DNA of 63,822 bases, filler included, from Octopus bimaculoides (taxonomy: Eukaryota), in assembly GCF_001194135.2 (NCBI RefSeq). It is 6 parts of 5 records of this genome, joined end to end, with 100 filler letters (N's around TTAATTAATTAA, not from the genome) between each part and the next. Parts side by side here need not be neighbours in the genome. Positions count along the whole stretch, not along the records: positions 40,083 to 56,624 come from NC_068991.1; 5 more parts are not named here. One strand, 5' to 3'. How positions within the stretch are numbered: the stretch's first letter is position 1; each line of letters begins with the position of its first letter. A program made the position numbers and the translations under genes. The notes below the pieces were generated by a model. The model had not been told where the DNA came from and searched no databases. It saw only the letters and a program-made list of their open reading frames with translations. This document shows, piece by piece, positions 51,125 through 52,914 of this stretch.

Positions 51125-52914
51125 CTAATGCTCATAATACTCATCATAATATTCATTATAATACTCATCACACATCCATGTGTGAACCATATTTTCCATA
51201 TCTGACTCTCCAATAAAATATGGATCACAGCCATAAGTAACACGTATGCTAACATTCTCTAAATTTTCAGTAGATTCTGGAGATAATTTGACAAAGAAAT
51301 TATGTCCATCTGGCTTTCCCAAATTCAGTTCTGATGTGCCTTCAGCTAACAATGTAACTGGGTCTGAACCATCCCCCTCTGTTAGCATATTGCTCTTTGA
51401 TACCTTAATATGAACTTCGCCACACATACTAGTGGCAGTAATTGTAATATTCCCAGCCCAGCTTGGATAAACAAAATCAAAGACTGGGTTTGCTTTCTCT
51501 GACACTGTAATACCTGAGACTGTTTTGTTAAATGGCAATCCTCGAATATGTTTCTCTACATTGCATGGTTTAATTCCCACAAGCCCATAGGATTTAATAA
51601 AGGGGGTTAGATCTTTCCCAAGATCGTAGGCAACCTTCAACACATCACAAGCCCCAGAAGTGAAATCTGAATGAGGATGCCAATATATTTTATTGGCAAT
51701 AAGGAAAACTTGGTAAGCTTCCTTGATATCCATTTTTAAATTGTGTACAATGTAGTAAAAAATAAAATTATAAATCCCACTTCCATGATGAGGATCCATT
51801 TCTTGATTGAATTTATCTACACGACTTATAGACACTTTGTCTAAGGACGGGTTTGCCAAAGATCTCAATGCTTTATCAACTTTCATGATGTTGAAGCCAA
51901 TTAACCAATCATTTTTATCTATATAAGCTTCAGTGACTTCTCCTGTTATATCAGAAAAAGCTTCATTGATAGATCCAGACTCATTAAAGTAAAGCAATCC
52001 AGAGTGTTGTTCTGTGAAGCCATGCGCAAGTTCATGCCCAACAATATCAGCATCTGTTAAAGGATAAATGCGTGTATGGCCATCACCAAATGTGCAATAT
52101 TCCCCATCCCAAAATGCATCTTCATAATATTTTCCATAATGAACACGCAATATAGCTTGTTTATTTAGTATTGAAATATTATACCATTCCTGAAACATCT
52201 GAGACGCCATACTGCCATAATAGAAAGCATCAAGTGCAGGAGATATAGCTCCATTGGCACTATCATTAAAACCAACGTCACAAACATAAGACATAGGATC
52301 TGTATTATTAGAGACTTCATCATAACTGTTTTGCATGTCCATAACCTTTANNNNNNNNNNNNNNNNNNNNNNNNNNNNNNNNNNNNNNNNNNNNNNNNNN
52401 NNNNNNNNNNNNNNNNNNNNNNNNNNNNNNNNNNNNNNNNNNNNNNNNNNNNNNNNNNNNNNNNNNNNNNNNNNNNNNNNNNNNNNNNNNNNNNNNNNNN
52501 NNNNNNNNNNNNNNNNNNNNNNNNNNNNNNNNNNNNNNNNNNNNNNNNNNNNNNNNNNNNNNNNNNNNNNNNNNNNNNNNNNNNNNNNNTCAATTCCTTG
52601 AATAAATGTTCCTGTTGCATCACCAGTCAAATGTCCATCTTTATCTTCTGTAACAGTTAATGAAGCATCAAAAACAGGGACACCTAAGAACTTCTCTTGT
52701 AAGCGTAAAACTTCTGTGCCTTCAGCTGTTTTGATACGGTTTGACTCTTCAACTTCTTCATACTCTTTCAAACCAAGAAGATCTCTGACTGTTACTTCAG
52801 CTTTATCTAAATGATGCCGCTGAAACGGAGCTGAGGGATGATAAATCATCCTCCTTGCTCTTTCATGAGCATCAACACGATAAGCTGCATCAGATGTCTT
52901 TATCAGTAACAAAC
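51125..52914 (-). CDS. M4 family (thermolysin/vibriolysin/pseudolysin-like) secreted zinc metalloprotease, main coding exon
   Basis: FTP-type propeptide (RLQEKFLGVPVFD), NGAISP, VHYG..EDAFWDG..FGDG, HELAH (52022-52036), GSINEAFSD, DPHHGSG, GACDV...VGIKPC, and a PPC-like C-terminal extension. No stops in the visible parts. N-gap at 52351-52589. Acceptor TTTTCATTTTTTAG|G precedes 52914; the first exon was not identified. Confidence 0.93.

What the first reader, a model, noticed from the sequence alone, without database searches (positions are those of the whole stretch)
51125..52914. Bacterial-type M4 (vibriolysin/pseudolysin-like) protease embedded in animal chromosome: candidate domesticated horizontal transfer
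Seen in sequence: a complete catalytic motif set (HELAH, GSINEAFSD, Y in LLYFNE, H in DPHH), an FTP-type propeptide and a PPC-like C-terminal domain. The visible frame has no stops although neighbouring transposon ORFs are decayed. Composition is AT-rich like the host, and the flanks are host repeats. Established knowledge: M4 is mainly a bacterial secreted protease family. The NGAxSP motif and the GACxV...VGxxC cysteine pair are features of the gamma-proteobacterial pseudolysin/vibriolysin branch rather than Bacillus thermolysin. Inference: an old bacterium-to-animal transfer now kept as a secreted enzyme (digestive, salivary/venom, hatching or antimicrobial). Related genes may already exist in other molluscs, so novelty is not established.
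Basis: partly seen in the sequence, partly recalled or inferred. Interest (0 to 1): 0.85.

Follow-up and report, generated by a model that had tools for sequence, protein, structure and literature searches.

The report
Octopus M4 protease of bacterial origin
This is a real octopus gene for a secreted zinc protease of a mainly bacterial family, but it was already published in 2018 as one of seven anciently transferred octopus "Zn-metalloproteinase" genes, so it is confirmed rather than new.

Summary
On the minus strand, 51125..52914 is the single large coding exon of a pseudolysin/vibriolysin-type M4 zinc protease. All catalytic residues are present. There is an FTP propeptide and a C-terminal beta-sandwich that is probably PPC-derived.

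The 239-N gap hides about 130 codons. Two octopus paralogues have 386 nt between the same flanks. Both lengths keep the frame, but the hidden sequence is unread.

The gene is host DNA, not contamination. It has 36% GC and 28% GC3, lies among piggyBac, mariner and LINE debris, and begins at a 3' splice site. The phase-1 intron in the signal peptide sits at the same place in Octopus and Haliotis.

Named eukaryotic relatives are all molluscs: chiton, gastropods, a bivalve and cephalopods. The nearest named bacteria are Vibrio, Shewanella, Aeromonas, Collimonas and Roseateles, at 33-46% identity.

Bacterium-to-animal transfer is supported but not new. Liu et al. 2018 (PMC6011040; Gene, doi 10.1016/j.gene.2018.05.013) list this gene as ZnMP3, XP_014776931.1, of Octopus bimaculoides. 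Their hepatopancreas RT-PCR product matches window 51563..51853 at 99.3%, with both primers exact.

Additions here: exon 1 of a second tandem paralogue at 42327..42375, the wider molluscan distribution, the shared intron, and a fast-evolving mature enzyme next to a conserved propeptide.

The parts
51125..52914 (-). Exon 2, the only large coding exon, of the M4 protease gene. It is the gene published as Octopus bimaculoides ZnMP3 (XP_014776931.1). The exon includes the stop codon at 51125..51127 and contains the assembly gap.
52915..56624 (-). 3' part of intron 1. The AG acceptor is at 52915..52916, preceded by a pyrimidine tract, and the intron is phase 1. Exon 1 lies beyond the piece edge. 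The intron carries antisense LINE fragments.
   Evidence: tblastn finds no exon 1 of this gene in 52937..56624.
52625..52744 (-). FTP (fungalysin/thermolysin propeptide) motif of the propeptide.
   Evidence: PF07504, E 1.9e-6, 28 bits against a cut-off of 21.
52351..52589 (.). Assembly gap of 239 N. It stands for about 386 nt (130 codons with the split codons): the rest of the propeptide (PepSY region), the pro/mature junction, and the first 35-40 residues of the mature enzyme, including the Cys partner of C23.
51563..52348 (-). Catalytic domain (Peptidase_M4 plus Peptidase_M4_C), residues 1-262 of the post-gap part. HELAH is at 52022..52036 and the third zinc ligand E129 at 51962..51964.
51233..51562 (-). 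C-terminal beta-sandwich domain, probably derived from the bacterial pre-peptidase C-terminal (PPC) domain.
   Evidence: Not confirmed by Pfam or by a single-domain HMM.
51128..51232 (-). C-terminal two-helix tail with a Cys pair. Its last 13 residues (EYYNEYYDEYYEH) are encoded by a 12-nt tandem repeat at 51132..51170.
51563..51853 (-). Stretch identical to the published RT-PCR amplicon of ZnMP3, made from hepatopancreas cDNA. 289 of 291 bases match and both primers match exactly.
   Evidence: PMC6011040, Tables 2 and 3.
42327..42375 (-). Exon 1 of a second M4 paralogue in head-to-tail tandem. It encodes MRNLLVIFCSWHLLFG plus 1 nt and is followed by a GTAAG donor at 42322..42326. Its exon 2 lies beyond the left edge of the piece.
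42376..42873 (-). 5' flank (promoter / 5'UTR region) of the second paralogue. It is 75-79% identical to the same region upstream of the O. sinensis and O. bimaculoides paralogues.

Best explanation
The finding is exon 2 of a host gene of Octopus bimaculoides, published as ZnMP3 (XP_014776931.1). It is one member of a tandem array of M4 (thermolysin-family, pseudolysin/vibriolysin-type) zinc metalloprotease genes.

Origin. The family descends from a proteobacterial pre-pro-M4-PPC gene that entered an early molluscan (or earlier lophotrochozoan) ancestor. The whole bacterial reading frame survives as one exon. A short eukaryotic 5' exon, separated by a phase-1 intron inside the signal peptide, supplies the start codon and the beginning of the secretion signal.

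How it most likely works, inferred from the family. The protein is secreted as a zymogen. The FTP/PepSY propeptide acts as a folding aid and inhibitor and is removed autocatalytically. The mature enzyme cleaves peptide bonds using zinc held by H105, H109 and E129, with E106, Y120 and H187 as catalytic residues. The beta-sandwich C-domain helps bind substrate or is trimmed off.

Role. Published RT-PCR from hepatopancreas makes an extracellular digestive role the most likely one.

Shown here or in the cited paper: gene identity, integration in the host genome, intact catalytic motifs, and transcription (from PMC6011040). Inferred: secretion, activation mechanism, substrate and physiological role.
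For: Family and motifs:
- Pfam M4, M4_C and FTP hits.
- LasB match at E 6.5e-64 with all catalytic and disulfide residues aligned.

Host integration:
- GC 36% and GC3 28%.
- piggyBac, mariner and LINE fragments in the flanks.
- An AG acceptor at the exon start.
- The same two-exon structure in O. sinensis, O. bimaculoides P0006 and Haliotis rufescens. All have a phase-1 intron 9-10 residues before the conserved AA(Y/V)RV motif.

Distribution. Named relatives come only from Octopus, Argonauta, Haliotis, Patella, Pomacea, Gigantopelta, Physella, Pinctada and the chiton Liolophura.

Bacterial affinity:
- The best GTDB matches are Vibrio, Shewanella, Aeromonas, Collimonas, Roseateles, Xanthomonas, Legionella and Corallococcus.
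- In NJ trees the animal clade excludes all 80 GTDB sequences.

Identity with the published gene: the ZnMP3 amplicon matches at 99.3% and both primers are exact. The HGT claim and hepatopancreas cDNA are in PMC6011040.
Against: - The gap hides about 130 codons, so intactness of this copy is not proven.
- Exon 1 is outside the piece.
- dN/dS of the mature part against the O. sinensis paralogue is 0.59-0.75, only marginally below 1. This is compatible with relaxed constraint.
- A degenerate duplicate of the acceptor lies 140 nt upstream.
- NJ bootstrap support for animal monophyly (24-41%) and for nesting inside Proteobacteria (51-67%) is weak. No maximum-likelihood tree could be run here.
- The digestive role rests on a single RT-PCR tissue in the cited paper.
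Confidence: 0.85

Rival explanations
1. The gene is bacterial contamination or a chimeric contig. It belongs to an associated bacterium and was mis-joined to octopus DNA.
For: M4 is overwhelmingly a bacterial family (PMC7851659). The best non-mollusc hits are Vibrio, Shewanella and Aeromonas, which are common on marine animals.
Against: - Identity to any bacterium is only 33-46%, and GC3 is 28%.
- Eukaryotic transposon remnants lie on both sides within the same contiguous sequence.
- There is a splice acceptor and an intron homologous to the introns of the O. sinensis and O. bimaculoides paralogues.
- Relatives sit on chromosome-scale scaffolds in several molluscs.
- The phase-1 intron is shared with Haliotis.
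Confidence: 0.01
2. The gene descends vertically. M4 was present in early eukaryotes or animals and was lost almost everywhere except molluscs.
For: - The family is old within Mollusca, from chiton to cephalopods.
- Several unnamed clades sit on large, gene-poor, eukaryote-like contigs and could belong to other phyla.
- Tree support for nesting inside bacteria is weak.
Against: - No named non-molluscan eukaryote appears among the hits of three large searches (with 35/38/53, and 56).
- The animal proteins keep the complete bacterial layout (FTP, PepSY, M4, probable PPC) and both pseudolysin disulfides.
- The whole bacterial-type frame is one exon.
- Legionella and Dokdonella branch deeper than the animal clade.
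- Published trees nest the octopus genes within bacteria (PMC6011040).
Confidence: 0.07
3. This particular copy is a decaying member (pseudogene) of the tandem array, even though the family as a whole is functional.
For: - About 130 codons are unread.
- dN/dS of the mature part is 0.6-0.75.
- The acceptor is duplicated, and the upstream copy would give a stop after six codons if used.
- A microsatellite has expanded in the last codons.
- Exon 1 was not seen.
Against: - 514 visible codons have no stop in 64% AT DNA.
- Every catalytic, zinc-binding and disulfide residue is conserved.
- The propeptide has dN/dS 0.11.
- A cDNA fragment of exactly this copy was amplified from hepatopancreas RNA.
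Confidence: 0.1
4. The enzyme's main role is not digestive. It could be salivary or venom, immune (killing or degrading microbes), or used in hatching.
For: - The genes are duplicated in tandem, and the mature enzyme evolves fast next to a conserved propeptide. That pattern is common in venom and immune gene families (general knowledge).
- Octopus has at least three further loci on other chromosomes.
Against: The only expression evidence available to me is hepatopancreas cDNA (PMC6011040). My literature searches found no paper naming an M4 enzyme in cephalopod saliva.
Confidence: 0.3

Closest known systems
Octopus bimaculoides ZnMP3 (XP_014776931.1), one of seven horizontally transferred Zn-metalloproteinases of Liu et al. 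2018 (Gene, doi 10.1016/j.gene.2018.05.013; Data in Brief, PMC6011040)
   Same: It is the same gene. The published 291-nt amplicon matches window 51563..51853 at 99.3%, and both primers match exactly. Two other genes on their list are proteins I retrieved independently: XP_014767445.1 = P0194 and XP_014782361.1 = P0056.
   Different: Nothing differs in the gene itself. The companion Gene paper could not be read here. I therefore cannot say whether it reports the two-exon structure, the intron shared with Haliotis, the wider molluscan distribution or the tandem neighbour.
Pseudolysin (LasB, MEROPS M04.005) of Pseudomonas aeruginosa, PDB 1ezm
   Same: - The match is E 6.5e-64 over 257 residues.
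- It shares HEXXH plus the Glu zinc site, the catalytic Tyr and His, and the C270-C297 disulfide. The C58 half of the C30-C58 disulfide is also present; its partner lies in the gap and is present in the paralogues.
- It has a pre-pro organisation.
   Different: - The octopus protein has a C-terminal beta-sandwich and a helical tail that mature LasB lacks.
- It is encoded by a spliced eukaryotic gene.
- Identity is roughly 40% by my reading of the alignment.
Vibriolysin / aeromonolysin-type M4 proteases with one PPC domain (about 590-610 aa; Aeromonas, Vibrio, Roseateles, Collimonas)
   Same: The domain order is the same: signal, FTP, PepSY, M4, M4_C and one C-terminal beta-sandwich. tblastn alignments run through to query residue about 372. 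The profile-profile match of the C-domains gives E 6.3e-5.
   Different: Identity is 33-46%. Pfam PPC is not detectable in the octopus protein. The octopus protein adds a Cys-containing two-helix tail.
Molluscan M4 paralogues in RefSeq, named 'elastase', 'neutral protease-like', 'virulence metalloprotease' or 'hemagglutinin/proteinase-like' (Octopus sinensis, O. vulgaris, Argonauta hians, Haliotis spp., Patella vulgata and others)
   Same: Identity is 65-83% within octopods and about 40% to gastropods over the full length, including the C-domain. The two-exon gene structure is the same.
   Different: Those names are carried over from bacterial virulence factors and say nothing about the animal function. 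Some Haliotis members have a Thr/Pro-rich linker between propeptide and enzyme that octopus lacks.

Membership tests
Peptidase family M4 (thermolysin family) | HEXXH zinc motif plus a third zinc ligand Glu about 20 residues downstream, in NEXXSD | tested here: met
   HELAH is at residues 105-109 (window 52022..52036) and E129 lies in GSINEAFSD. These align to LasB H140, E141, H144 and E164.
Peptidase family M4 (thermolysin family) | Catalytic Tyr and His of the C-terminal helical domain (LasB Y155, H223) | tested here: met
   Y120 and H187 are aligned to them and are invariant across 20 relatives.
Peptidase family M4 (thermolysin family) | Profile matches to Peptidase_M4 and Peptidase_M4_C above the curated thresholds | tested here: met
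   77.8 bits against a cut-off of 22.4, and 88.4 bits against 24.4. The N-domain match starts at profile position 34 because the first part lies in the gap.
Peptidase family M4 (thermolysin family) | Zinc-dependent endopeptidase activity | not testable with these tools
   This needs recombinant protein and an activity assay with and without phosphoramidon or EDTA.
Pseudolysin/vibriolysin subgroup of M4 | Two disulfides (LasB C30-C58 and C270-C297) | tested here: inconclusive
   C234 and C262 (the C270-C297 pair) and C23 (= C58) are present. The partner of C23 lies in the gap, but it is nearly invariant in the paralogues in the CFLEN motif.
Pseudolysin/vibriolysin subgroup of M4 | N-terminal propeptide with FTP and PepSY domains | tested here: inconclusive
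   FTP is met, E 1.9e-6. The PepSY region falls in the gap. In relatives PepSY is recorded as present or weak.
Pseudolysin/vibriolysin subgroup of M4 | C-terminal PPC (pre-peptidase C-terminal) domain | tested here: inconclusive
   - Pfam PPC gives no hit.
- A single-domain HMM is not significant.
- hhalign against bacterial C-domains gives E 6.3e-5, probability 64%.
- Foldseek top hits include PPC 5sv5 and ColG CBD, E 3e-4 to 1e-3, TM 0.43-0.63.
Bacterium-to-animal horizontal gene transfer | Physical integration in the host chromosome, not contamination | tested here: met
   Host transposons flank the gene, composition is host-like, the gene has a spliceosomal intron, and paralogues and orthologues lie on chromosome-scale scaffolds.
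Bacterium-to-animal horizontal gene transfer | Recipient sequences nested within donor-domain diversity in a supported phylogeny | tested here: inconclusive
   The NJ topology agrees: one animal clade, no GTDB bacterium inside, Legionella and Dokdonella deeper. Bootstraps are only 24-67%. Published trees claim nesting (PMC6011040). No ML tool was available here.
Bacterium-to-animal horizontal gene transfer | Patchy distribution in the recipient kingdom | tested here: met
   All named eukaryotic hits are molluscs. One caveat: several unnamed eukaryote-like contigs could not be assigned to a taxon.
Bacterium-to-animal horizontal gene transfer | Expression in the recipient | not tested
   It is reported by RT-PCR from hepatopancreas cDNA in PMC6011040, and that amplicon matches the window. 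No RNA-seq was available to me.

The most novel reading that the evidence does not exclude
The transfer may be far older and wider than an 'octopus HGT'. On this reading there was a single acquisition before the split of chitons from conchiferan molluscs, possibly earlier in Lophotrochozoa. It is marked by one phase-1 intron in the signal peptide that is shared by Octopus and Haliotis.

Repeated tandem expansion would then have followed. In that expansion the propeptide stays nearly constant (dN/dS 0.11, possibly homogenised by gene conversion), while the mature protease and its C-domain diversify quickly (dN/dS 0.6-0.75).

The unnamed M4 arrays on large, gene-poor contigs (for example ERZ25767047, with up to five copies on one 1.19 Mb contig) might show the family in further, unannotated animal groups.

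I could not read the Gene 2018 paper, so part of this may already be stated there.
Probability: 0.45. Interest if true: 0.5.

Novelty: already known. Interest (0 to 1): 0.27.

Why it matters
It is a clean case of a bacterial secreted protease that was captured by an animal lineage, given a eukaryotic signal-peptide exon, and then expanded. Such cases show how foreign genes become domesticated. They may also explain part of molluscan extracellular digestion.

For this scan, the main value is calibration. The case is already in the literature and in RefSeq, so it should not be counted as a discovery.

Tried and rejected
- Looked for exon 1 of this gene upstream, in 52937..56624, by tblastn with word size 2. 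None was found. The only exon-1 match in the piece lies downstream and belongs to the next paralogue.
- Looked up the window's own protein (P0001) in the contig index. It is not on record.
- Read P0010 at first as an intronless version of the gene. I rejected this: its first 14 residues are read-through of the pyrimidine tract and AG of the same intron, and the close relative P0009 on mRNA-like contigs has a different N-terminus.
- Searched the mollusc C-domain HMM alone against 81 bacterial proteins. There was no significant hit.
- Tried to name the organisms behind the unnamed clades with three cluster look-ups and a second homology search. Most have no names.
- Ran seven literature searches on M4, thermolysin, pseudolysin or vibriolysin combined with octopus, mollusc or abalone. 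They found nothing relevant. The 2026 metazoan HGT compendium does not mention octopus or proteases in its main text, and its supplements were not searched because one search failed on a term that was too short.
- The Gene 2018 companion paper is not held in the library.
- The first genome-contig scan failed and was repeated.
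Full report
**What is in the sequence**

The gene lies on the minus strand. From 52914 down to 51125 there is one reading frame, interrupted only by the assembly gap at 52351..52589.
- The part after the gap (51128..52348) is 407 codons followed by a stop.
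- The part before the gap (52592..52912) is 107 codons.
- Immediately upstream of 52914 the minus strand reads ...ttttcattttttag|GTTTGTTACTG, a pyrimidine tract and an AG acceptor.

**Family assignment**

- Pfam finds Peptidase_M4 (E 1.5e-21) and Peptidase_M4_C (E 6.4e-25) after the gap, and FTP (E 1.9e-6, above the curated cut-off) before it.
- The best solved structure is Pseudomonas aeruginosa elastase (pseudolysin, 1ezm) at E 6.5e-64. Legionella and Pseudoalteromonas enzymes follow. Thermolysin and bacillolysin reach only about 1e-23.
- From that alignment and a 20-sequence alignment:
  - HELAH 105-109 = LasB H140/E141/H144.
  - E129 = E164, the third zinc ligand.
  - Y120 = Y155 and H187 = H223.
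  - C234/C262 = the C270-C297 disulfide, and C23 = C58.

**The gap**

The flanks of the gap are collinear with the uninterrupted exon 2 of an O. sinensis paralogue (P0002, locus L001) and of an O. bimaculoides paralogue (P0006, locus L088). Nucleotide identity to L001 is 96% before the gap and 89% after it. In both references exactly 386 nt separate the two aligned blocks.
- With the two split codons this makes 390 nt, or 130 codons, corresponding to P0002 residues 125-254.
- The hidden part is the rest of the propeptide, the pro/mature junction and the first 35-40 residues of the mature enzyme, including the Cys that pairs with C23.
- The stated 239 N is about 147 nt too short.
- Both 239 and 386 are 2 mod 3, so the frame is nominally kept. 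Nothing can be said about stops inside the unread stretch.

**Gene structure and neighbourhood**

In O. sinensis the gene has two exons. Exon 1 encodes 16 residues plus one base (MSHLMVLFYSWHLLFG). A 4.7 kb intron follows, and exon 2 encodes everything else.
- O. bimaculoides P0006 has the same structure with a 2.8 kb intron.
- Haliotis rufescens P0012 has it with a 22.6 kb intron.
- In Octopus and in H. rufescens (P0012) the intron is phase 1 and lies 9-10 residues before the conserved AA(Y/V)RV motif.
- In the window only 3.7 kb of the intron is present, and exon 1 is not found.

The intron holds antisense LINE fragments (RVT_1 at 55169..55372). Downstream of the gene lie piggyBac transposase fragments in several broken frames (48785..49355) and a mariner HTH (45242..45433).

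At 42327..42375 on the same strand there is a perfect exon 1 of a second paralogue, MRNLLVIFCSWHLLFG, followed by a GTAAG donor. Its 5' flank is 75-79% identical to the 5' flanks of the O. sinensis and O. bimaculoides genes. The piece therefore covers part of a head-to-tail tandem array.

**Not contamination**

- The coding sequence has 36% GC and 28% GC3, like its surroundings.
- It is only 33-46% identical to any bacterial protein.
- It is flanked by animal transposons and has a spliceosomal intron.
- It has relatives on 77-100 Mb chromosomes of O. sinensis, O. vulgaris and O. bimaculoides, and on Haliotis chromosomes.

**Distribution**

A word-index search and an exhaustive HMMER search of 1.84 billion cluster representatives (9492 hits at E <= 0.001, 518 at E <= 1e-30) gave the relatives. 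Thirty of them were looked up by name.

Named eukaryotes are all molluscs:
- Cephalopods: Octopus (at least four loci on three chromosomes) and Argonauta.
- Gastropods: Haliotis (several paralogues, including a GenBank 'metalloprotease' of H. discus hannai), Patella, Pomacea, Gigantopelta and Physella.
- Bivalve: Pinctada.
- Chiton: Liolophura.

Several further clades have no names. They sit on large, gene-poor contigs of 32-40% GC, in some cases with retrotransposon genes nearby or several M4 copies per contig. These look eukaryotic but could not be assigned to a taxon.

**Bacterial affinity and trees**

A scan of one genome per GTDB species gave 580 confirmed bacterial relatives. The best 80 are Vibrio, Shewanella, Aeromonas, Salinivibrio, Collimonas, Roseateles, Undibacterium, Xanthomonas, Legionella, Chromobacterium, Corallococcus and others.

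I built neighbour-joining trees of the catalytic domain, because no ML program was available.
- With 274 sequences, the smallest clade containing all named molluscs has 63 members. None of them is a GTDB bacterium. Bootstrap support is 24.5%.
- With 113 named or context-checked sequences, the 28 animal sequences form one clade (41% bootstrap). That clade is sister to the bulk of the proteobacterial sequences. Dokdonella and Legionella branch deeper, at 51-67%.
- The topology fits one transfer from a proteobacterium, but the support is weak and the donor cannot be narrowed further.

**C-terminal domain**

- AlphaFold2 models (pLDDT 81 for the 407 residues and 87 for the domain alone) show an eight-stranded beta-sandwich followed by two helices.
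- Pfam PPC does not match, and a domain-only HMM is not significant against bacterial proteins.
- A profile-profile comparison with the C-terminal domains of 31 bacterial proteins of 575-625 residues (the size class in which records Pfam PPC, for example in Aeromonas and Roseateles) gives E 6.3e-5 and probability 64%, collinear end to end.
- Foldseek's top matches include the PPC domain of B. anthracis collagenase and the ColG collagen-binding domains.
- I take the domain as probably PPC-derived. If so, the whole bacterial layout was transferred.

**Evolutionary rates**

These figures compare the window gene with the O. sinensis paralogue.

| Region | dN/dS | dS |
|---|---|---|
| Propeptide | 0.11 | 0.07 |
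| Catalytic domain | 0.59 | 0.18 |
| C-domain | 0.75 | 0.13 |

The propeptide is also nearly identical among paralogues. This suggests strong constraint, or gene conversion at the 5' end, together with fast change in the mature enzyme. The excess of synonymous over non-synonymous change in the mature part is only marginal, at about two standard errors by my calculation from the counts.

**Already published**

A literature search found Liu et al. [quoted passage not shown] - They list seven Zn-metalloproteinases (ZnMP1-7) as bacterial transfers 'nested within bacteria homologs'.
- They amplified fragments from hepatopancreas cDNA.
- Their ZnMP3 (XP_014776931.1) amplicon matches window 51563..51853 in 289 of 291 bases, and both primers match the window exactly.
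- Two other genes on their list are proteins I had retrieved independently.

The window is therefore O. bimaculoides, and the finding is ZnMP3.

**Verdict**

- Added here, though possibly covered in the unread paper: the exact exon and gap anatomy, the tandem neighbour, the phase-1 intron shared with Haliotis, the distribution across four molluscan classes, the probable PPC origin of the C-domain, and the contrast in rate between propeptide and enzyme.
- The function remains inferred. It is a secreted, self-activating zinc endopeptidase, most likely digestive, given the hepatopancreas expression.

Noticed in passing
window 42327..42375 (-), with 5' flank to about 42873: Exon 1 of a second M4 paralogue in head-to-tail tandem. 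It encodes MRNLLVIFCSWHLLFG followed by a GTAAG donor, and its 5' flank is conserved. Its exon 2 lies beyond the left edge of the piece. It may be the neighbouring published gene ZnMP4 (XP_014776937.1), but this could not be checked.
   Followed up: partly
window 53040..53095 versus 52908..52958 (-): The last 45 nt or so of intron 1 plus the first 7-18 nt of exon 2 are duplicated about 140 nt upstream. The upstream copy continues the orthologous intron. Its exon-like part is degenerate and would give a stop after six codons if used as an acceptor. It is either a local duplication or an assembly artefact.
   Followed up: partly
window 51132..51170 (-): A 12-nt tandem repeat (3.2 copies) encodes the C-terminal EYYNEYYDEYYEH. 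It makes the tail 8 residues longer than in the O. sinensis paralogue.
   Followed up: no
window 48785..49355 (+), perhaps to 49634; 45242..45433 (+); 53871..55863 (+): These are decayed transposon remnants. They comprise piggyBac-type transposase (DDE_Tnp_1_7) split over several frames, a mariner/Mos1 HTH_48, and LINE-like fragments (RVT_1 hit at 55169..55372 only) lying antisense inside intron 1.
   Followed up: partly
window 50298..50356 and 50619..50743: (TATA)n/(TACA)n and (TATG)n/(TG)n microsatellites lie between the transposon debris and the 3' end of the gene. They produce the long spurious Y/I/C/V-rich ORFs in the ORF list.
   Followed up: no
window 52592..52912 versus 51128..52348 (-), compared with L001: The propeptide is far more conserved than the mature enzyme: dN/dS 0.11 against 0.59-0.75, and dS 0.07 against 0.13-0.18. 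It is almost identical among paralogues. This could reflect gene conversion at the 5' end or diversifying pressure on the enzyme.
   Followed up: partly
L002 6001..6045 (ENA ERZ21867824, protein P0010): The database ORF appears intronless. In fact its first 14 residues are read-through of the intron's pyrimidine tract and AG, at the same phase-1 position as in Octopus. This is an ORF-caller artefact that could mislead intron counts.
   Followed up: yes
L085 (ENA ERZ25767047), and the contigs of P0090, P0136 and P0258-P0263: Unnamed M4 genes sit in tandem arrays on large contigs, with up to five copies on one 1.19 Mb contig. Where the surroundings were inspected (L085) the contig is gene-poor and about 38% GC. 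These look like unannotated eukaryotic hosts inside 'metagenome' assemblies. The taxon is unknown.
   Followed up: partly
Haliotis proteins P0015-P0018, P0020 and unnamed P0021 (alignment A1, columns 228-350): One abalone subgroup carries a Thr/Pro-rich, mucin-like linker of 60-120 residues between the propeptide and the catalytic domain. It is absent from octopus and from bacterial relatives.
   Followed up: no
PMC6011040, methods: The animals used for RT-PCR were bought at a market in Shenzhen, China, yet were called the Californian species O. bimaculoides. The ZnMP3 amplicon is nevertheless 99.3% identical to the window, whereas the O. sinensis paralogue is 89% identical. The species identity of those animals is unclear.
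   Followed up: no
L001 339..383 (O. sinensis, 9.6 kb upstream of P0002): An exon-1-like relic (MRRLWVIFYFWHLLF) has lost its GT donor. No exon-2-like match follows it in the 9.6 kb before the P0002 gene.
   Followed up: no
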